Shown: positions 18,179 to 64,000, counted from the stretch's first letter. The stretch: DNA of 64,000 bases from Asterias rubens (GCF_902459465.1 NC_047076.1:4402001-4466000); one strand, 5' to 3'. A program made the numbers and translations. The notes: generated by a model from the sequence alone, not told the origin.

Positions 18179-19993
18179 ATGATGGAGTCATCAATAGTCA
18201 TGGAAAGCTCAACCATTGATGAGGAAAGTTCAGTCACAGCATCAACTTCTGGAGGAAACGACCCACAAATATTCAACCATTCCATTGAACAGAAGGCCGA
18301 CCCACAAGGCACCTTCAGTTTCGGCTTAAAAGGTAAATGGGCTGATAAATAACTTGTTGAGGTTTACAGACAAGTCTCGAATTCACAAAGCACTAAGATA
18401 TCTTCTTGAAGGGAATTTATACCTTTGGTTTTTCGGGCATACAATTGTTTTTGAATGTTGATTTTAAGTTGTTGATTGTATCTTATGCACTTTTAGTAAG
18501 ATTTTTGAAATAGAATGTAATGGATCAATAATAACTAAACAAAAAAGGAGAGACCACGTCCTATGTATTACTATTACCAACAATAAAAAACAACCGACAC
18601 ACACAAAATAGAAAATATTAACAAGTCAAAATAACTTCAATTTTGTTCTCAGAGGACAACACACCATGCCATGTTGGACTGACAGACAAACACATGGGGA
18701 GTTCTTTAAAAGGTGAGTACCAATAACGATTCTATGATTTAATGATTAAGTGCGACTGATGCAGAAACAAAAAGCAGTTTCAGTTTGAAAGCTCAATGAT
18801 CAGAGATCCAATCCTCTACTGAAGAATATTACTCTGCAAGTCAAGAAAGAATAACAAAGAATAACATGCAGGCCACAGAGGCCTGGTCTTGGCCTTGGTC
18901 AGGTCTTGTGCCTGGTCTTGGCCTAGCTTGGTGCTCCTTCAAAAGTTTCCCTTTGACTTTAAGAAATTCCATTGGAAGTGCCCTTTGCAAAATGACGATG
19001 ACCTTGCCCTTTCGAAGTGAACTTCTAGGCCTGATTTAGAGAGTGATCCCAAAATGCCCAAAACAACTGATTGACACTTAAAATGAATACCTCTTACCAA
19101 GATAAATCGCAGGTGTGAGATTTTTAAGGGAAAACAAGTTTTCTCTTTTGTGCGAGATGCATATTCAACAAATGTTTTTATTTGGTTTATGACTAGCAAT
19201 TGGCCAAGAGATGAAGACTGCATGTCTGGAATGGGAACAAACGATGGTGTAAGTAGAAAACATTGATATGGATTTTATCATAATATACATGTAGTGGCTT
19301 CTTATATAGCGCGCATAACGGTCACTCAGTGCTGCTCAAGGTGCTTTAACACAAAGTATTTTCCTGTGTAGTGTGTTGGACAACGTATCAATTATGAGAC
19401 CTACATAGCTCCATGTATGATTAACAAGGTGCTGTGGCACAATATGCTGCTATTCAAATCAGGAACACCGGGGCGAACCCCTTCTCTTTTAGCAATAAGT
19501 GCACTGGGTTCTTTTACTTGCATTACACAATGCTTGGCATGATACTCACATGAAAATAATACGCGCAATCCCAAGGAAGGATATAACGTACATTCATAGC
19601 TTGCTGGGTTCCATTTCTATAGTGTAGATCTTAAACTTTGCCATTTTCAAAATTGGAGATGCACTGTTGGGTGTTTTTTTTTCAAAAACTCTTTTAGTGC
19701 CAAGGTCATACATGTACGATATAGTTTATGTGTTCCAAAAGTGTCATTTTCAACCATCTACAATCTAAAGTATGCACTGAAGGAGTCCATATAGATTTCC
19801 CATTTAACACTGAATTATTCTTCTTATTGTTCCTAACCAAAGAGAGAGTGAGCAGTTTGAGTTGTTCTGCCCAACCAGAGTTGATAAGTTGCTTCAAGAG
19901 GCGCATGCCATGGAGGAACATCTGCTGCGTCAGAAAGAGGAACTCATCTCACGTCTTAGAAATCTCTCTCAGACCCTACAGGTTATCTCCTAG
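18179..19993 (+). CDS. TEX12: TEX12-like synaptonemal complex central element protein, 138 aa
   Basis: Exons 18179-18332, 18653-18712, 19197-19248, 19843-19993 join in frame (417 nt). C-terminus IGQEMKTACLEWEQTMVESEQFELFCPTRVDKLLQEAHAMEEHLLRQKEELISRLRNLSQTLQVIS aligns without gaps to recalled human TEX12 [64 protein letters not shown]. Confidence 0.8.
18868..19033. mobile_element. Interspersed repeat with CAGGCC...GGCCTG-type ends; copies about 46140-46200, 53579-53725, 61377-61495
   Basis: Shared core GGCCTTGGT..CC.TTCAAAAGTTTC ... AAGTGCCCTTT.CAAA ... CTTGCCCT. Confidence 0.65.
19330..19530 (+). mobile_element. Interspersed repeat fragment; reverse copy about 36580-36720
   Basis: TTATGAGACCTAC ... 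ACAAGGTGCTGTGGCACAA.ATGCT ... CACCGGG ... CACTGGGTTC in both. Confidence 0.6.
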
Positions 19994-55124: not shown

Positions 55125-55400
55125 TAACTAGCACGTGCAACTCAAAAATGTCGTCTGCAAAATAAAAAAGCGCGCCAAAAATCATAGCCTACATTTTCAT
55201 TGGCGAAAAGTTTTAGGCTGCTTTCACTTTTTTGAAGCCAGCTAGCTGGTACGCGCTGAGGTTTACAAACGCGCATACATGCCCAATGCTATAATGTTCG
55301 TTTACCATTGACACAGTACATGCAGTGCATTCCAATCGGGCGTCCATACATTCATTACATACACGACCGTACACTCTGAACGAAAGTACACACGCGCACG
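55125..55400 (+). promoter_or_regulatory. Candidate promoter of the ZCWPW2-like gene
   Basis: CpG-enriched; E-box CACGTG 55132-37; E2F-type GCGCCAAA 55172-79; ATTGGCGAAAA near 55199. Confidence 0.4.
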
Positions 55401-55615
55401 AAAACCCAAAGCAGACGACACACTTGCTCAGTGCCTCTTAACTCTCTACCATAAATAGCTCTTTGCTCTCTACTCATATCTTTGGTATGTTTTAGTTAGT
55501 GAAACAAGGTCCTTTCTCTTTGGTGGTACTGACAGTACAGCATTTGCTGATTTGCCGGCAGTTTTAATGACTACAGTTCCTGTTTACACTTGGTATTTTT
55601 GAGTTGAACTTCATC

Positions 55616-58600
55616 ATGTTCAAGATGATGGAAATAACACCAGAAGAGGTAGGGATTTTTTTCAATGAATTTACTTTTCATTTTTGTCAACGCATGCAGT
55701 GGTGGCGGTTTGTGCTACTGCAAAACAAGACAAGCGTACACTGTTCACTACAGCTGTTATTGTTTGTCATGTTTGACATTGATATATTGTTGAACTGAAG
55801 CAAATTTGTGCATGGTATTTAATCATTAATTCTCTTTTCTGTGGGCATGGTCACAATGGTGGGCATCATTCATTCATGATCATGATGTTGCTTAGCCCTG
55901 CCCTTGGCCTAACCATGCTAACAATGTAAATCACCATCTCCCTTTTTTGTATTAAACTAAAAGTACAATGTAGATGTCAGTCAGCACGGTCAGTGTCACT
56001 AGTCACAGAACATGCAGGACACTTAAAGGAACACGTTGCCTTGGATCGGACGAGTTGGTCTATAAAAAAGCATTTGTAACCGTTTTTTATAAAAAGCATA
56101 ATGGTTGGAAAGATGTTTTAAAAGTAGAATACAATGATCCACACAAATTTGCCTCGAAATTGCGTGCCTTTCCTTTTACTGTGCGAACTAACACGGTCGG
56201 CCATTTGTGGGAGTCAACAAATTTACTCCCATAATAAATGGCCGACCGTGTTAGTCGACGAGGTAAAAAAATAATAGGAAAACCGTGCAATTTCGAGGCA
56301 TGTTTGTGTGGATCATTGTATTTTACCAAATATCTTTCCACCCATATGCACTTTATAACAAACGGTTACAAAGACCAACTCGACCGATCCAAGGCAACGT
56401 GTTCCTTTAATATGCTACGGTTCTGCACATCAGCACAGGCTAGTGTAGTAATTATAGACCCCCATACTCCCATAGTAATTTTATTTATTCTAAAGAGGGG
56501 CCCAGGGCCAGGCAAAAGTAGAGCAGAGGGCCAATTTATTTGGCACAAGCAAATATCCCTCCTTGCAAAAAAGTCCTATCTAAACTAAGGAGAAAAAAAT
56601 GCCTAATTAGAATCTTAAAGGACTGCTTTAAAAGCATGTTAAGTCAATATAAGGCCTAGCTAGGATAGATAAGTCAAGATAAGGCCTTAGGTACTTATTA
56701 ATATTAGATTTTTCGTCACTTCTTTGTCGATTCATGAATAAGATTCCTATTTTCTAAGAAGGCACCCCCTTAACTTCTTAAGCCTATAGTTTCTCAAAGT
56801 CAAAGAAGGGTTAAGACTATAATGGCAACAGCTTTTTTAACAAAGGCTCTTTATATTCTAGATCACTGCTCTGCCTATAGACAATATTTTTGTGCGAGTT
56901 ATTCACTGATCGAGAGGCGCTACCCTTCATAAAAAAAACCATAATAAATAAAAAAATAGGCCTATGTGCTAAGGATTAGTTTTTAATCTGTTGCAGGTGA
57001 AGGAGCTATCTTGGGTGCAATGTGAAGACGAAGCTTGTCTGAAATGGAGACGGATTGACCGGGAAGAGGTGACCAGCCTTGAGAACAAATCCTGGTTCTG
57101 CCATATGAACAGTGACCCAAAACACAACAGGTCAGTTGGTTGCTTACTTGCCTAAAGGCATTGGACACATTTGGTAATTTTCATAGACCAGTTTTCTCTC
57201 TTGGTGTATCCCAACATGCATAAATTAGAGCCAAGTAAGAAAAGAAGACAGTCAAGGAGATTCAGTTTTAGTGTGAGGAGAACCCCAGAGAACTATTCTA
57301 GGGAAAATCCATGCAGTCAAATAGGGACTGAAAACCCAATCCACAATTTACATGTAGTATTCGCGATGGGATTCGAACCAGTGTTCCAGCGGTGGAAGGC
57401 GAGGCACACCCCTACACCAACCTGACTGCATTATCAATCTATTGCTCAATCATTACACTTCCATGATCTTTCCTTTTTATCTTAGATGTGAGGACCCAGA
57501 GGAAGATCACAGGCGAACGATTCAGACAGCCAACAAATGTGGCTACCGTTACATCTTTAGTCAACTACCCAAAGGCTCCCTAGTCTGGGCTAAGATGACA
57601 GGTCATGTCAGGTCAGCTCTATACTTAATTATCTTTTTCAGTTACTTACTTATTTATTTACATACTTATTTTGCACCTGCGGCAAACAATTTGCTGCAAT
57701 GCATCTTGGGAATTAAAAATTAGTTGCAACCAGTGTCAAAGTCGCAACTAGTTGAGGCACTACTAGTCGAGTAGTAAATTTCACTAGTCGCCCAGGCTTA
57801 TTCCATTACGAGTATCAGGTCTGATGTTGAGCAATGACATAAAAACATGAATTTCCCTGTATACAGATGGCCAGCAATCTTATCGGAAGACCCGGCTACT
57901 GGAGACTATTCCGTTATCAATAATGAGACTGGGACGCCTACCGAGTATCACGTTGAGTTCCTTGGACAACCTCAACACTCCCACTGCTGGGTGCCAAGCG
58001 GAAATGTTGATGTCTACGGGTCCTCATGCTCTTACCCCAAGCCACAAAGGGTATGAGAAAATTACCAATTTATCTTCATAGGCACTAGACACATTTTGGT
58101 AATATTCAAAGACCACTATTTTCATGTGGTGTGTCCCAACATTTGCATGAAAAAAGCATGGTGAGAAATGACTTCCTCTAAAGTAAAGAGGTAATTTCTC
58201 ACCCAAAATATTTGAATCTGAGAAAGACTTTCGGCCCGACGCCTTTCTCAGGCATTTGCGAGCACAACTGTTCAACAAGGGTTTTTTCTTTCATTATTCT
58301 CTTGCAGCTAAAACCAAAATTTATATTCTTTATCCCCGATGCAAATTTAACATCTATTAAATCTGGGTTACATACACAAACCTAATATCTTAGTATGTCC
58401 TTGTATTTTCAAGAGTATTTGAACAAATTCCTCCTTACTTCCTGTTTACCTGATCCTAAATCAATTAAGTTTTCAAATATTTTGTTTTATTTTATTTAAA
58501 GAGTACCAAACGAGGCAAGAAGTCCGTAGCCATGTCTGCATACATTTTGAAGAAGAGTGAGCAATACATCAAGAACTTACATGCATCTATGGATGAAGCT

Positions 58601-61600
58601 GAGCTCATTAAGTCTCTTAGTAATGAAGAGAGGTGGATAAAATGTGTCTTTCGTTATAAACCAAAGACGGAGGCAGCTGAACATCTCAACAAGCCAACAG
58701 GTAGCCTACATGTTAATGGTGTCGTCTAAACTTTGCAATATTTTTCAGATTGTTTAGAGAATACTTTTTTTTAAAGACCCCCCCCAAAAGTTGTAGTTAC
58801 TGTGCATGAATATAGACGATGTGACCTACATGTATGTTTACATTCAAACCGACCTCTGTTGACAAAACACTGTATATGTCATGTTTCGCCGGGCAAAAAA
58901 GATGCGTAGTCATGGTAAGATTGCATACTTTCTAGCTGGCTGCCAAAACACAAAGGTTTTGCCCGGCGGTATGCGCGCAAATCATGTTATGATTTTTGAG
59001 TGATGTCAGAGGTCACATCGTCTGTATGTAGCGTGTCATTGCTGGCCGAGAGGTTTAGCGCACAGGACTGGAGCTCTGGTGCTTCTGATTGGCAGAGTTT
59101 GGGTTTGAGTTGTACTCATAGACCTTATCGCAAATACCAATGCGCAAGCGCAGACTGTTGAATGAGGTGCATTGTGGGATATATATGGATCAAATTTGGA
59201 TACCAGCAAGACCACAATGCACCTAATTCCAAGCTTTACGCGCGCGCCCCGGTATTTGCGAAAAGGTCTATGCCACTTCTAAATTGTGTCCTTAGGGATT
59301 GTGTGTAATTGGAACCCACTGTTTGTTTTAGTCCTTTATAGTTGTACGTGTAGATATTTTATACCAAAAAACTAACTTGCAAAATTTTAATTTCAAAAAG
59401 TGGAGGAGTTTTTGAGATATGGAGTGGTTATCATGCAGGTAGAATAATCTGCAATTGGGATACACAGTGTAACATTAGTGCAAGGCTCTTGGATTATTGG
59501 ATATATGCATATTGTTTTGTTCAGGTTATGAATTGCATATTTGTTTTGTTTTTTTTGAATATTTTGTGAACTAATTCAAATGACCCTACAGAGGAACAGA
59601 AAGAAAAACGGCCAACTCAACAAAATGATGTGGTTAACCCAGCAGTGAAGAAAAAGCGAGGAAGACCGCCGTCCAAACCTAAGGAAATCAGAGAATCCAA
59701 AACAACAGGCAAATCTACACATACAAAGAGACCGGTAAGAAAAAATTTTCTTCTGCAGAACTATCAAGGTCAAGTAAATGAAGACCCTCAAAACCACAGT
59801 TGGTTATTCTGATTGTCGCAACAGAAATAAGCCGAAATAAAAAAAAAAAAACTCATGGCAAACCAGAGATCGGAATCGTTATTTTTGTTTTTGGATATGA
59901 CAGAATTTGGCCAATAGGCCAACATTTTGTTGTAAACATGTTGGATGTATTGAAAACAAAACGATGGAAATGAAGTTACTCTTCTTAGGGCCACTGATTT
60001 TCCGTTTCAGAAAAGTGCAAATTCCGTTTGGCAAAAACATGAATTCCGTTTCAGGCACAAAAAATTCCGTTTCATGTTTTTTTAATTAGATAAAAGGTTG
60101 TTTAATACCCAGGGACACACTTATAAAAAACAATTTGAGATAAGCTGCACTGTTGACTTCGTAAAATGTTCATTTCGACTTCTTAAAACCATAGATGTAC
60201 CTCCCCTTAAAGGTTTGATATCGTTTGTAGATCAAAGTTTTTGGCCATGACATGAGACCCTACTCACTGTGAATGAAGATGTATGTAATATAGTTTACTA
60301 GCCCTGTAGAGGCTAGAATTTAAGGAATTCCCAATCTTTGTTTTCTTTTAACTGTTTGCGTTATTTTTTTGGCTACTGCAGAAGACGGTATCTTTCCCTC
60401 AGCATCCAGAGTTTCTGCATAAAGCATCTCATGAACCTTCACTGACATCTTCAGATGATGACTCCACTCCTCAATTAGTACCTGAGCTTATCACCACTAA
60501 AGAGGAGCGCCTTCAAGCTGATATCAAGGTATGGCTAATTCATTCAGGTAAAAAAAAAACATTTTAACGGCTTGATGTTTCGACCCTAGCACAAAATCAC
60601 AAACCACAAACCAGTTAAGGAGGAGCACCTCTAAGCTGATATCAAGGTATGGGTAATTCATTCATTGTCAAATGTTTGTACTTGTAATTGTTTTCCTGAC
60701 CAGGGTTTAGGTACTTTTTGTATGACACAAAACACAATGTTCACAGATTTCCATTTAATTTACGCAGGTTGAAGATAATGGTAGTAGAAACCTTCCCTTA
60801 AAATATTACTTGTGATGTGTTTTAGTTTTTGAGAATTGAGCAAAACAATTTCACAAAAATAATTTTGTCTCGGGAGAGTACAGAGTTGCTAAGTACAAAG
60901 TATTTACGCGACTCTCCTAAAAACAGTCTTTTAATATTTGAGTGAGAAATTACCTCTAACTCAAATACTCTGTTACTTCAGAAGGAGCCGTTTCTCACAA
61001 TGTTTTATAATATCGACAGCTCTCCATATTACTTTTAGTATTGCCCGTTATCAAGTAAGTGTTTATGAAAACTTTTACAAATGAGTAACTACCAATAGTG
61101 TTTAGTGCCTTTAAAGACTAATTCCTGTTCCTGTATATTTATCCCTTCACCAGCTTCTAAGAAAGGCAGAGGAGAAGTTTGAACAACGGCTGCACAGATT
61201 TTCACAACGTCATGGGATACCAGTGAAAAACAGTAGGCCCAATTGGCAAGGGCGCCAGGTCAGTCCCTACCAGGTCTATATGGCAGTGCAGGAGCGAGGT
61301 GGCTACAATATGGTAAGCTACAGGTGTAGTCTTTTGCCCTTACATTATCAGGCTAACTTCTTTGTTGCCCCTTGTATTGGCCTTAGTGCCCATTCAAAAG
61401 TTTCCCCATAGACTTTCCCAAGGTTTTCCTTTGGAAGTGCCCTTTTTGCAAAGTGAAATTGGCCTTGCCCTCTCTAAAATGAAATTCCAGGCCTGCATTA
61501 TGTCCCGTCCACTTAAACAACTGCCCTCTCAAGTGACATTGGACAGGTTCATATCAAACATAGCTTGAAAATAATTATCTGCTAAGCAGAAATGAGCAGG

Positions 61601-64000
61601 AGCCAGTCACATATTGTACATGCAACATGGTAGTTCAGCCTGTAACCAGTGGTAACCTTATTTTGGTAAGCATAATTTCTTTATGCTTAGCTACTTTTTA
61701 TGCTTAAGCAGCTCTATGAAATTGGGCCCTGATCAACAAGCCACTACCCAGACTGCACAATTCGCAAACAATTTATAGTACAGCTCTCTCTTCGGCAGCA
61801 CTTCTTTATACTTTTGTGATGTCAGACTTTTGGCTTCTGACTGACACCAATGCACAAAGATATTTACAAATTAGGTATCTAGACCGCCAACATAATGGCT
61901 AGATAGCTCAATTGGTAGAGCACTGGCATATTAATCCAGAGATCCCAGGTTTAAGTCCTGCTCTAGGCAATTTGTCATGCATCATTATACTCATACAAAA
62001 ACAATATATTTTATGTGACTATTAATGTTGGTTTTTACCCATACACCGATGTGTGTTAGCACTGTATACTCAGTACTTTCCCGAGTCCTGTGAAATAAAT
62101 ATCACAGGCATGTTACTTGGGTGGGATTTGAACCCACGACCCTTGCTATTCTAGAGCAGTGTCTTACCAACTAGACTACCGAGGTTGGAGGTAGCTAGAG
62201 GCATCTCTTATAAACAATATATGAATTTATTACTTGTGTTAAACTCAAGGTTTGTGCCAACCGTGCCTGGGCTCAGGTCTACAAAGATGCCTGTGGAACA
62301 AGCTTGGGACCTCATGCATCAGTCAGTAGCGCAGTCAAAACATACTATATCAGGTGATGATTTCTCTACTTTTTGACCAAATAACCAATTTACATTTATC
62401 TAACAAATTGATTTCTCAAATCCACCACTACCCCACTGTCATTTTAAACTTGATACAATTTTCCTGGAAATACACGGAAAAACAGGGCTCAAACACTTTG
62501 AGAAACATCCAAAAGACCACAGGGCTTGCAGCTTAAAATGTTTATTAAACTAGAATTCTTGCCACGGCATTTTTTTATTATGATTCGGGGCAAGCTTTTG
62601 CGTAGTTGCATTTAAGCAGTGGCAAACACAATTCTGACTAAATGTCTATGAAACAATTGCACCGTCTGGGTTTTCTTATCTGGAAGTTGCTATACACAAA
62701 AGCTTGCTCCGAACCACTTGACATAGCAACTGCCTCTGTAGTCGGAAGAATTCACACTTAAGCAGTTACATGTGAGTAAGCAAGTCATTGTACCAGATCA
62801 TTCAAAACTTGTAAATGACTTATTGGCCCTACAATCTACCATCGAGCAGGAGGTTTAACATATAATTTAACAAACTTTATTTCAGATACCTCCTTCCTTA
62901 TGAACTGCATGAACTACGCTCAGTTGATGTCGATAAAACATTGAGATCATCTGAGACGGACCACAGAAAGCACGCCAAGAAACACCATAAGACTAAGAGT
63001 AAGAAACACACAAAGTATCCGAAGCAAGTCGCACAAATGTCTAAACAAGCCCCGTCAGTCACCACTAACCAGAAGTGCCTATCCAATCGACCAATCACCA
63101 TGTCCTGTCAGCATAACAGACCAATAGTAGGGCTTGAGCGGACGTGTCAGCCTGTGATTGGACAAGCAGCTGTGACCTATCAACCAGTTGGTGGTCTTTA
63201 TCAGCCAATGACAACCAAGAGTCAACATTGGTATCCAATAGCAGATGAGGAGAAATCTGAAAGGGCTCACATTGGTTCTCAGGGACAACCATGCTTAGCA
63301 CCAACACCACATGGCTTCCAAAAAGGTACTGAACAGCGATACGTATCCATATATATTTTTTGTTACATCTCAAAGAGGCATCATTCTACAGCTTTCTGTA
63401 CTGTGGTCAATTTGAATCCCTAATCATAACCGCCCCAGACAGTTTATTGGTGGGGAGAGCAGTCACCTGTAGATATAACTTCGGCTAGAAATGTGTAAAC
63501 ATAGGCGTGGCGCGCAAGCTTTCCACTTAGGAGCTTATTTACACAAACTAAAATAAATACACCTGTAATCAATGTACTATTATTCAACTATTAGTGCACG
63601 CGTGCATGTACACACAGGGGTTGAGCGCCGCAGGCATTTTGACACTTCCCAAAACGGAACATGAGTATGACAAGCTGGAAATTTACAACAAATTAAGGAT
63701 AGATTTTCAAAAGTTTGTACGATTTTTTAAATTCATTAATAAAAATCAACAAGTGGTGACTCGGTCTTGAACGTTCTTTTAAAATATTGCAGGGTCGTGG
63801 CCGTGCAATCAGCTTGGTCCTTTAACATACGTTCAAGACCTCATACCACTCTTTTATTTCCTTATTTTTGTATAGATGCAGATGGTTCATCAGGAGGGTT
63901 TATTGACGTAGATTATTTACAGGAAGAGTCCAATCAAGCCTTGATAGAGCTGAAGGTTATGGAGGAGATGCTGAGTAGTCTGGATAATCAGGACGGCAAA
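55616..64000 (+). CDS. ZCWPW2: ZCWPW2-like protein with zf-CW, PWWP, AT-hook and ARID domains; 3' end beyond the window
   Basis: Exons 55616-55648 (tentative start), 56997-57130, 57486-57611, 57867-58050, 58502-58700, 59592-59734, 60382-60528, 61154-61312, 62250-62353, 62886-63325, 63876->64000; all phases match. CW: WVQCEDEACLKWR...WFCHMN...RC. PWWP: GSLVWAKMTGHVRWPAIL...EYHVEFLG. The CW-PWWP linker CGYRYIFSQLPKGSLV resembles recalled ZCWPW2 CGFKIVYSQLPLGSLV. Confidence 0.85.
56027..56406. mobile_element. 380-bp almost fully palindromic TTAA-flanked MITE
   Basis: TTAA|AGGAACACGTTGCCTTGGATCGG ... CCGATCCAAGGCAACGTGTTCCT|TTAA; inverse symmetry continues to a central GGGAGT...ACTCCC hairpin. 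Confidence 0.85.

What the first reader, a model, noticed from the sequence alone, without database searches (positions are those of the whole stretch)
55616..64000. ZCWPW2-like histone reader fused to an AT-hook and a full ARID DNA-binding domain
Seen: downstream of zf-CW and PWWP, the spliced frame encodes KKKRGRPPSKPK (AT-hook, exon 59592-59734). It then encodes an ARID fold over three exons: KFEQRLHRFSQRHGIPVKNSRPNWQGRQVSPYQVYMAVQERGGYNM (61154-61312), VCANRAWAQVYKDACGTSLGPHASVSSAVKTYYIR (62250-62353) and YLLPYE (from 62886). The L/F-Y..V...GG, W and YL.PYE hallmarks are all present. Known: vertebrate ZCWPW1 reads PRDM9-laid H3K4me3/H3K36me3 at recombination hotspots, ZCWPW1/2 co-occur with PRDM9, and neither is known to me to carry ARID. 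Inference: this protein could combine dual-mark reading with direct AT-rich DNA binding, either an ancestral architecture lost in vertebrates or a lineage-specific fusion. It could also offer a different route for targeting meiotic chromatin.
Basis: partly seen in the sequence, partly recalled or inferred. Interest (0 to 1): 0.9.

Follow-up and report, generated by a model that had tools for sequence, protein, structure and literature searches.

The report
Starfish-type ZCWPW2 gene carrying an ARID domain
This is a real single gene for a histone-mark reader of the meiotic ZCWPW2 type that also carries an ARID DNA-binding domain; the same build is already in public databases for echinoderms, acorn worms and molluscs, is ancient, was lost in vertebrates, and has not been discussed in the papers I could search.

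Summary
Eleven GT-AG exons (55616-64000, + strand) give an open 598-codon frame. That frame is letter-for-letter the first 598 residues of the 732-aa protein already on record for this genome. Pfam finds zf-CW, PWWP and a full-length ARID, and the predicted ARID fold matches only solved ARID structures.

The one-gene reading holds:
- The same CW-PWWP-ARID build is predicted in four other echinoderm, two hemichordate and seven mollusc species.
- A scallop contig without introns carries all three domains in one ORF.
- The three introns at or inside the ARID sit at identical positions and phases in this echinoderm, a hemichordate, a gastropod and a bivalve.

The fusion therefore predates the protostome-deuterostome split. 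All 79 vertebrate ZCWPW2 proteins retrieved lack ARID, so it was lost on the way to jawed vertebrates. On the CW-PWWP tree the family sits with ZCWPW2 and not ZCWPW1. The AT-hook is found only in echinoderms.

Novelty is lower than claimed. The architecture is already auto-annotated in databases, and an oyster paper's table files "ZCWPW2" under ARID transcription factors. No paper I could search discusses it, and mammalian ZCWPW2 is described as lacking DNA binding. Function is inferred, not tested. The scan has not reported this before on other DNA.

The parts
55616..55648 (+). Exon 1 with the start codon (residues 1-11)
   Evidence: It has a GT donor and matches the first residues of the database protein P0007.
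56997..57130 (+). Exon 2: zf-CW domain, with the four Cys and three Trp conserved across the family
   Evidence: Pfam zf-CW scores 9.6e-13 on this exon alone. The best solved relative is the ZCWPW2 CW domain 4o62. In the model it matches 4o62/4z0o at rmsd 1.4-1.5 A. W17, C20, C25, W28, W44, C46 and C57 are invariant in 12 orthologues.
57486..57611 (+). Exon 3: end of the CW region and start of PWWP (SLVWAKM...)
   Evidence: Alignment A1. The intron after it (column 206, phase 2) is shared by all four species examined.
57867..58050 (+). Exon 4: PWWP beta-barrel core (WPAIL ... YHVEFLG)
   Evidence: Pfam PWWP scores 3e-4 on this exon and 5e-10 on the whole protein. Foldseek and phmmer match NSD2/NSD3 PWWP1.
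58502..58700 (+). Exon 5: helical part of PWWP (residues 160-225)
   Evidence: The AF2 model has helices at 169-196 and 200-206. hhalign against vertebrate ZCWPW2 runs through this part of the protein (E 1.4e-54).
59592..59734 (+). Exon 6: disordered basic linker holding the AT-hook-like motif KKKRGRPPSKPK (59648-59683)
   Evidence: The KKKRGRP string is also present in Patiria and Amphiura, and is degenerate in Acanthaster. It is absent from hemichordates, molluscs and vertebrate ZCWPW2. Pfam AT_hook is below its threshold.
60382..60528 (+). Exon 7: acidic/Ser linker, ending in the conserved pre-ARID motif (T/S)KEE(R/K)(L/F)..D
   Evidence: K313, E314 and D320 are invariant in 12 orthologues. 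The AF2 helix starts at residue 313. The intron after it (column 605, phase 0) is shared by four species.
61154..61312 (+). Exon 8: N-terminal half of ARID
   Evidence: Pfam ARID scores 9.6e-9, profile positions 2-47 of 89. The intron after it (column 658, phase 0) is shared by four species.
62250..62353 (+). Exon 9: middle of ARID, including the helix-turn-helix segment (SVSSAVKTYY)
   Evidence: It aligns to ARID5B, KDM5C, ARID3A and ARID1B. The intron after it (column 695, phase 2) is shared by four species.
62886..63325 (+). Exon 10: end of ARID (YLLPYEL), then a disordered basic, low-complexity region
   Evidence: The Pfam ARID match runs to residue 416. The AF2 pLDDT is below 50 for most of residues 430-571.
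63876..64000 (+). Exon 11, cut off by the window end: conserved helix (LQEES...MEEMLSSL). The last 134 residues of the protein lie beyond the window.
   Evidence: The model matches P0007 to residue 598 of 732. The AF2 helix is at 569-593. The motif is conserved in the family.

Best explanation
Shown: the region is one protein-coding gene. The window holds at least 11 of its exons, and its 3' end lies beyond the window. It belongs to an echinoderm, and by protein similarity probably to a starfish outside the Acanthaster/Patiria group. The protein has, in order:
- an N-terminal zf-CW domain;
- a PWWP domain;
- a disordered basic linker with an AT-hook-like KKKRGRP motif;
- a conserved helix that leads into a complete ARID fold;
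- two further conserved helices near the C-terminus.

It is a member of an old gene family with this exact build, present in echinoderms, hemichordates and molluscs. Its CW-PWWP part is closest to vertebrate ZCWPW2. The family's exon structure, including the three ARID-associated introns, is the same in deuterostome and protostome members. The fusion therefore existed in the bilaterian ancestor, and the ARID was lost in the line leading to jawed vertebrates.

Inferred: the protein works as a germline (meiotic) chromatin reader like mouse ZCWPW2. CW would bind H3K4me3 and PWWP would bind H3K36me3. The ARID, and in echinoderms the AT-hook, would add direct, low-specificity contacts with AT-rich or nucleosomal and linker DNA. 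Those contacts would strengthen or prolong binding at marked nucleosomes. The C-terminal helices would recruit partner proteins.
For: Gene model and identity with the annotated protein:
- The model is an open 598-codon frame over 11 canonical exons. It is identical to the database protein P0007.

Domains:
- Pfam places ARID, zf-CW and PWWP above their curated cut-offs.
- The ARID-only AF2 model has pLDDT 82.6. Its 18 best PDB matches are all ARID domains, led by ARID3A 4ljx (TM 0.64-0.66, rmsd 1.6 A).

One gene rather than two:
- The same architecture is predicted in Acanthaster, Patiria, Amphiura, Ptychodera, Saccoglossus and seven mollusc species.
- Scallop contig L001 carries all three domains in one uninterrupted 611-codon ORF.

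Ancient origin:
- Introns fall at alignment columns 605 (phase 0), 658 (phase 0) and 695 (phase 2) in the window, Saccoglossus, Haliotis and Mercenaria.

ZCWPW2 affinity:
- The branch separating this family plus vertebrate ZCWPW2 from ZCWPW1 has support 98/96.
- The family HMM scores ZCWPW2 at 145-170 bits and ZCWPW1 at 88-113 bits.
- The best solved CW domain is that of ZCWPW2.
- hhalign against vertebrate ZCWPW2 gives E 1.4e-54.

Loss in vertebrates:
- All 79 ZCWPW2 proteins from sharks to mammals have CW and PWWP only.

Germline role:
- The oyster gene called ZCWPW2 and filed under ARID is testis-biased, together with Prdm9 (PMC12111275).
- Mouse ZCWPW2 reads both marks and binds HORMAD1, IHO1, MEI4 and REC114 (bioRxiv 10.64898/2026.05.22.727067).
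Against: - There are no expression, binding or genetic data for this species, so every functional step is inferred.
- The first position of the PWWP aromatic cage is His in echinoderms and hemichordates. It is Tyr in molluscs and Trp in vertebrate ZCWPW2. H3K36me3 binding is therefore not assured.
- The tree has no outgroup. If its root lies on the branch of this family, the family would be the pro-orthologue of both ZCWPW1 and ZCWPW2 rather than of ZCWPW2 alone.
- The apparent resemblance of the C-terminal helices to vertebrate ZCWPW2 motifs did not beat shuffled controls in an HMM test. It reached only hhalign E 0.006 at 6% probability.
- A complete 444-aa CW-PWWP transcript without ARID (P0017) groups with the family. 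ARID-less forms therefore also exist in some invertebrate.
Confidence: 0.6

Rival explanations
1. The gene is real and ancient, but the protein is a general chromatin or transcription regulator. It would be an ARID-family factor that uses CW and PWWP to find active genes, as KDM5 or ARID4 complexes do. It would not be a dedicated meiotic recombination factor.
For: - ARID proteins are mostly transcription and remodelling factors, and the solved ARID matches are of that kind.
- Mouse ZCWPW2 itself also sits at promoters and affects transcription (PMC12828234).
- There are no expression data for this species.
Against: - The oyster orthologue is strongly testis-biased and is co-expressed with Prdm9 and SYCP genes.
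- The CW-PWWP part is specifically ZCWPW2-like.
- No Jmj, Tudor, RBB1NT or chromo domain was found.
Confidence: 0.22
2. The family is not the orthologue of ZCWPW2 alone. It would be the single pre-duplication gene from which vertebrate ZCWPW1 and ZCWPW2 both descend, or an old third paralogue lost in vertebrates.
For: - The tree is unrooted in effect.
- Ambulacrarians group with molluscs rather than with vertebrate ZCWPW2 (support 91/90), which is not the species tree.
- NCBI names the scallop protein 'ZCWPW1-like'.
Against: - A 2026 preprint reports separate Zcwpw1 and Zcwpw2 genes in nearly all of 28 cnidarians, which puts the duplication before bilaterians.
- The family HMM scores ZCWPW2 far higher than ZCWPW1.
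- The CW domain is N-terminal, as in ZCWPW2.
Confidence: 0.15
3. Two neighbouring genes, a short ZCWPW2-like gene and a separate ARID gene, were merged by gene prediction and by the first reader.
For: - No transcript data are available for this species.
- Exons 6 and 7 encode disordered, poorly conserved linker.
Against: - All ten junctions keep the frame open with canonical splice sites.
- The same build is predicted independently in 13 or more species of three phyla.
- An intron-free scallop contig has one ORF across all three domains.
- Intron positions and phases are conserved along the whole gene.
Confidence: 0.03

Closest known systems
[quoted passage not shown]
   Same: It has an N-terminal zf-CW followed by PWWP with its helical extension. 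Identity is 40% over 177 aligned profile columns, with hhalign E 1.4e-54. It lies on the same side of the ZCWPW1/ZCWPW2 split. The oyster member shows germline-biased expression.
   Different: Vertebrate proteins are about 330-440 aa and have no ARID and no AT-hook. Mammalian ZCWPW2 is described as lacking DNA-binding ability (PMC12828234). The protein here is 732 aa and has an ARID between PWWP and the C-terminal helices.
Vertebrate ZCWPW1
   Same: It shares the CW plus PWWP dual-reader core.
   Different: Its CW domain is internal, after a long N-terminal region. It scores lower against the family HMM (88-113 bits), sits across a 98/96-supported branch and has no ARID.
ARID4A/ARID4B (RBBP1), with the solved PWWP-ARID tandem 7v8n
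   Same: A PWWP-type reader lies directly upstream of an ARID in one chain. The ARID fold matches 7v8n (TM 0.60, rmsd 2.2 A), and phmmer gives 29.5 bits.
   Different: No Tudor, RBB1NT or chromo-barrel domain is detected. The PWWP here matches NSD2 and NSD3, and the ARID4A chains match only over the ARID. About 100 disordered residues separate PWWP from ARID. ARID4 proteins have no CW domain.
KDM5/JARID1 demethylases and the plant ARID-PHD proteins (Arabidopsis ARID5, 6lqf)
   Same: They use the same logic, with an H3K4me3-reading zinc finger and an ARID DNA-binding domain in one protein. Their ARID folds match (5ceh, 2yqe, 6lqf).
   Different: KDM5 proteins have JmjN and JmjC catalytic domains, which are absent here. 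These are independent domain combinations.

Membership tests
ZCWPW2-type CW-PWWP readers | zf-CW domain with four Cys and conserved Trp residues | tested here: met
   Pfam zf-CW scores 54.4 bits against a cut-off of 27.5. C20, C25, C46, C57, W17, W28 and W44 are invariant. The best PDB match is the ZCWPW2 CW domain. The model fits 4o62 at rmsd 1.5 A.
ZCWPW2-type CW-PWWP readers | PWWP domain directly after CW | tested here: met
   Pfam PWWP scores 40.2 bits against a cut-off of 25.6. hhalign to vertebrate ZCWPW2 covers both domains.
ZCWPW2-type CW-PWWP readers | Groups with ZCWPW2 rather than ZCWPW1 | tested here: met
   The separating branch has support 98/96, and HMM scores are 145-170 against 88-113 bits. 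Caveat: the tree has no outgroup, so the root is assumed.
ZCWPW2-type CW-PWWP readers | Complete aromatic cage in PWWP for H3K36me3 | tested here: inconclusive
   W99 is invariant. Position 129 is aromatic in all 12 (Phe in ten, Trp in Patiria, Tyr in Sinanodonta). The first cage position is His96 here and in the other ambulacrarians, and Tyr in molluscs. Cage positions were assigned from my own knowledge of NSD2 and DNMT3 PWWP domains.
ZCWPW2-type CW-PWWP readers | Binds H3K4me3 and H3K36me3; meiotic expression and function | not testable with these tools
   The only support is indirect: testis bias of the oyster orthologue and the mouse data.
ARID/BRIGHT DNA-binding domain | Full-length match to the ARID profile above the curated threshold | tested here: met
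   PF01388 scores 67.6 bits against a cut-off of 24.1, profile positions 2-89 of 89.
ARID/BRIGHT DNA-binding domain | ARID helical fold | tested here: met
   The AF2 model has pLDDT 82.6 and pTM 0.74. Its top 18 Foldseek PDB hits are all ARID domains.
ARID/BRIGHT DNA-binding domain | Binds DNA | not testable with these tools
   The recognition-helix segment keeps Ser and a nearly invariant Lys405 and Tyr408, aligned to the TRRHY, LRTQY and LKKQY segments of ARID5B, ARID3A and ARID1B. That is suggestive only.
AT-hook | R-G-R-P core flanked by basic residues | tested here: met
   KKKRGRPPSKPK is at 59648-59683. The identical KKKRGRP string occurs in Patiria and Amphiura within an otherwise unalignable linker.
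AT-hook | Pfam AT_hook score above threshold | tested here: not met
   It scores 7.3 bits against a cut-off of 17.4, E = 7. The model is only 13 positions long.
ARID4A/B (RBBP1) | Tudor, RBB1NT and chromo-barrel domains around PWWP-ARID | tested here: not met
   The Pfam scan of P0007 gives only ARID, zf-CW and PWWP.
KDM5/JARID | JmjN and JmjC catalytic domains | tested here: not met
   No Jmj hit was found in P0007.

The most novel reading that the evidence does not exclude
The ancestral bilaterian ZCWPW2 was itself a DNA-binding protein. Through its ARID, it tied the PRDM9-type double histone mark to the DNA of the marked nucleosome, or to AT-rich DNA on the chromosome axis. That contact would help place or stabilise the break machinery. 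Vertebrates would have dispensed with it when ZCWPW2 shrank to a pure reader and adaptor. If so, invertebrates that have PRDM9, such as starfish and oysters, would use a different, more DNA-guided route from histone mark to double-strand break. Recombination maps there should then show an AT-rich or ARID-motif signature on top of PRDM9 motifs.
Probability: 0.15. Interest if true: 0.75.

Novelty: new variant of a known kind. Interest (0 to 1): 0.45.

Why it matters
ZCWPW2 has only recently been shown, in mouse, to link PRDM9's H3K4me3 and H3K36me3 marks to break formation. The mammalian protein is described as having no DNA-binding ability.

The orthologous gene in echinoderms, hemichordates and molluscs carries a complete ARID, and by its intron positions has done so since before protostomes and deuterostomes split. 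The vertebrate protein is therefore a reduced form, and the ancestral reader probably touched DNA directly.

This gives people who study PRDM9 evolution a concrete and cheap experiment: DNA and nucleosome binding of a starfish or oyster ZCWPW2, with and without its ARID. It also gives a new character to score next to PRDM9 presence and absence across animals.

It does not reveal a new kind of molecular system. Both parts are well-known domains, and the sequences are already public.

Tried and rejected
- **PDB search with the 53-aa ARID exon alone** gave only chance hits such as SUMO and affilin. The whole domain was needed.
- **C-terminal homology with vertebrate ZCWPW2.** I suspected that the two C-terminal helices (the 'LE.ML' motif and the terminal 'EID.L..EL') are homologous to the two conserved C-terminal motifs of vertebrate ZCWPW2. 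That would have put the ARID inside the ancestral ZCWPW2 frame. hhalign gave only E 0.006 at 6% probability over 11 columns. HMMs of the vertebrate motifs scored the family no better than shuffled sequences. I do not use this as evidence.
- **Whole-model Foldseek** was dominated by PWWP and CW hits. A separate ARID-only model was needed.
- **The exhaustive search with the ARID exon** returned two spurious low-complexity proteins, P0002 and P0005. I set them aside.
- **Vertebrate loci could not be fetched.** I wanted ZCWPW2 genomic loci from coelacanth and catshark to compare introns and to look for ARID relics. One was not on record and the other gene spans 183 kb, so no DNA was returned.
- **The scallop genomic locus** was not on record.
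- **Literature searches** for zf-CW+PWWP+ARID and for ZCWPW2+ARID found no paper that discusses the combination. The PNAS paper on ZCWPW1/2 and PRDM9 does not mention ARID or invertebrates.
- **The word-index protein searches missed known members** such as the oyster gene. The species list is therefore a lower bound.


Full report
**1. What is in the sequence**

Reading 55400-64000 and stitching the open exons gave 11 exons on the + strand. All have AG acceptors and GT donors, and together they form one 598-codon frame that is still open at the window's end.

Pfam on single exons gave these results:
- zf-CW on exon 2, E 9.6e-13.
- PWWP on exon 4, E 3e-4.
- ARID on exon 8, E 9.6e-9, 36 bits against a curated cut-off of 24.1, covering profile positions 2-47 of 89.
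- AT_hook at only 7.3 bits, against a cut-off of 17.4.

**2. It is an annotated gene**

An exhaustive HMMER search of 1.84 billion representative proteins with the 53-aa ARID exon returned five hits. Three are true relatives:
- P0001, 719 aa, 79% identical over the exon.
- P0004, 576 aa.
- The fragment P0003.

Both full-length proteins carry zf-CW, PWWP and ARID in the same order.

Searching with P0001 found P0007, a 732-aa protein listed as the window's own. My stitched model is identical to its first 598 residues. The public annotation of this genome therefore already holds exactly this model. The remaining 134 residues lie past position 64000.

Pfam on P0007 gives:
- ARID 1.3e-18, residues 328-416, the full profile.
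- zf-CW 1.3e-14.
- PWWP 5e-10.

**3. Fold**

An AlphaFold2 model of the whole protein has these confident blocks:
- CW.
- PWWP with its helices.
- Residues 313-420, with pLDDT about 80-87.
- Two isolated helices at 569-593 and 700-731.

The linkers are disordered.

Foldseek with the whole model hit NSD2/NSD3 PWWP1 and the ZCWPW2 CW domain, the latter at rmsd 1.4-1.5 A and 43-44% identity.

A separate model of residues 305-429 reached pLDDT 82.6 and pTM 0.74. Its 18 best PDB matches are all ARID domains: ARID3A, KDM5A, KDM5D, Dead ringer bound to DNA, the ARID4A PWWP-ARID tandem, ARID2 in PBAF, ARID1B, ARID5B and Arabidopsis ARID5 ARID-PHD.

By sequence the best solved ARID is ARID5B/MRF2, followed by KDM5C, ARID3A and ARID1B. 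No known subfamily is clearly the nearest.

**4. One gene, and an old one**

Species with the same architecture. Precomputed Pfam hits show CW+PWWP+ARID in these species:
- Echinoderms: Acanthaster planci, Patiria miniata and Amphiura filiformis.
- Hemichordates: Ptychodera flava and Saccoglossus kowalevskii.
- Molluscs: Sinanodonta, Argopecten (named 'ZCWPW1-like'), Solemya, Mercenaria and two Haliotis species. The third Haliotis, H. rubra (isoform X2), has only ARID and PWWP on record.

The ESM Atlas holds a 66-member cluster, mostly molluscan, auto-named after the three domains.

A supplementary table of an oyster study lists LOC105335639 as 'ZCWPW2', family ARID. It is testis-biased, and Prdm9 is high in the same tissue.

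Transcript-level support. A 2,429-bp Logan contig from a scallop run (L001) has a single uninterrupted 611-codon ORF with all three domains and with flanks on both sides. The gene has three introns at or inside the ARID in every genome examined, so this contig is best read as assembled mRNA.

Intron positions. I mapped the proteins onto genomic loci of Saccoglossus (L004), Haliotis cracherodii (L005) and Mercenaria (L006), and onto the window. Intron positions in the family alignment A1 are as follows.

| Alignment column | Phase | Position in the protein | Shared by |
|---|---|---|---|
| 605 | 0 | before the ARID | all four species |
| 658 | 0 | after the ...ERGGY.. block | all four species |
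| 695 | 2 | after ...YY.R | all four species |
| 206 | 2 | in PWWP | all four species |
| 117 | 0 | before CW | three of the four |

Independent fusions would not reproduce this pattern. The fused gene therefore predates the protostome-deuterostome split.

**5. Relation to ZCWPW1 and ZCWPW2**

- The family profile scored Latimeria ZCWPW2 at 189 bits and fish ZCWPW1 at 88 bits or less.
- hhalign of the family against 13 vertebrate ZCWPW2 proteins gave E 1.4e-54 over CW-PWWP.
- In a maximum-likelihood tree of the CW-PWWP region of 30 proteins, the branch that separates ZCWPW1 from ZCWPW2 plus this family has support 98/96. The family forms one group (91/90), and inside it echinoderms, hemichordates and molluscs sort as expected.
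- The tree has no outgroup, so orthology to ZCWPW2 alone depends on the root. A 2026 preprint that finds both paralogues in cnidarians argues for an old duplication.
- All 79 vertebrate ZCWPW2 proteins retrieved, from sharks to mammals, have CW and PWWP only. The ARID is thus absent from all sampled jawed-vertebrate ZCWPW2.

**6. Details of the parts**

- CW: four Cys and three Trp are invariant in the family.
- PWWP: W99 is invariant and position 129 is aromatic in every member (Phe in most). The first cage position is His in ambulacrarians and Tyr in molluscs. I assigned the cage positions from my own knowledge of NSD2 and DNMT3.
- A motif (S/T)KEE(K/R)(F/L)..D precedes the ARID and is invariant at K, E and D. 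It starts the long first helix of the ARID model.
- The recognition-helix segment keeps a nearly invariant Lys405 and an invariant Tyr408.
- The AT-hook string KKKRGRP is identical in the window species, Patiria and Amphiura. It is degenerate in Acanthaster, and absent from hemichordates, molluscs and vertebrate ZCWPW2. It is an echinoderm addition. Its conservation between starfish and a brittle star, inside an otherwise unalignable linker, argues that it is used.

**7. Mechanism (inferred)**

By homology with mouse ZCWPW2, the CW and PWWP domains should read H3K4me3 and H3K36me3. Mouse ZCWPW2 needs both domains, depends on PRDM9 marks and binds HORMAD1, IHO1, MEI4 and REC114.

The ARID and the AT-hook would add contacts with DNA next to the marked nucleosome. 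The closest structural precedents for a reader plus an ARID in one chain are the ARID4A PWWP-ARID tandem, KDM5, and the plant ARID-PHD cassette solved with both an H3K4me3 peptide and DNA.

Mammalian ZCWPW2 is described as lacking DNA-binding ability, so this would be a real functional difference. Nothing here tests binding or expression in this species.

**8. What failed**

The attractive idea that the C-terminal helices match the two conserved C-terminal motifs of vertebrate ZCWPW2 did not survive a shuffle-controlled HMM test. Vertebrate loci could not be fetched to look for ARID relics.

**9. Verdict**

The novelty is moderate. The sequences and their domain hits are already public, and one paper's table shows the ARID class. 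No paper I could search points out or interprets the ARID in invertebrate ZCWPW2.

Two unchecked first-reader notes report PRDM9-like genes elsewhere in this genome.

Noticed in passing
window 56023-56410: Intron 1 holds a foldback element of about 390 bp made of nested inverted repeats. The outer arms are 39 nt and 97% complementary, and the inner arms are 55, 38 and 33 nt. It looks like a MITE or foldback transposon.
   Followed up: partly
window 62114-62185 (- strand), and a second tRNA-like stretch near 61888-61960 (+): ARAGORN calls a 72-nt 'tRNA-Ser(aga)' inside intron 8. A Ser tRNA without a long variable arm is odd, and a second tRNA-like stretch lies about 150 bp away on the other strand. 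These are more likely tRNA-derived SINE heads than working tRNA genes.
   Followed up: no
L003 1124-2635 (JGI metagenome 3300002144), protein P0027: This intron-free 503-aa gene has zf-CW (317-360) directly followed by ARID (387-473) and no PWWP. It lies next to an NDUFA5 gene. It is probably from a microbial eukaryote and is an independent CW-ARID combination.
   Followed up: partly
L002 280-1614 (Logan SRR17562243), protein P0017; also P0021: These are complete CW-PWWP proteins without ARID. One (P0021) has an N-terminal RING finger. Both group with the ARID family next to molluscs in the tree. They come from an unknown organism and may mark a lineage that lost the ARID or swapped it.
   Followed up: partly
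window 18179-19993: Another first-reader note on this window reports a TEX12-like synaptonemal-complex gene. If it is real, two meiosis-related genes lie within 40 kb of each other. I did not examine it.
   Followed up: no
P0110 and P0111 (same 90% cluster as the window's protein, on a 17.75-Mb contig): A second assembly or a sister species carries the same 730-732-aa CW-PWWP-ARID protein, including the KKKRGRP motif.
   Followed up: partly
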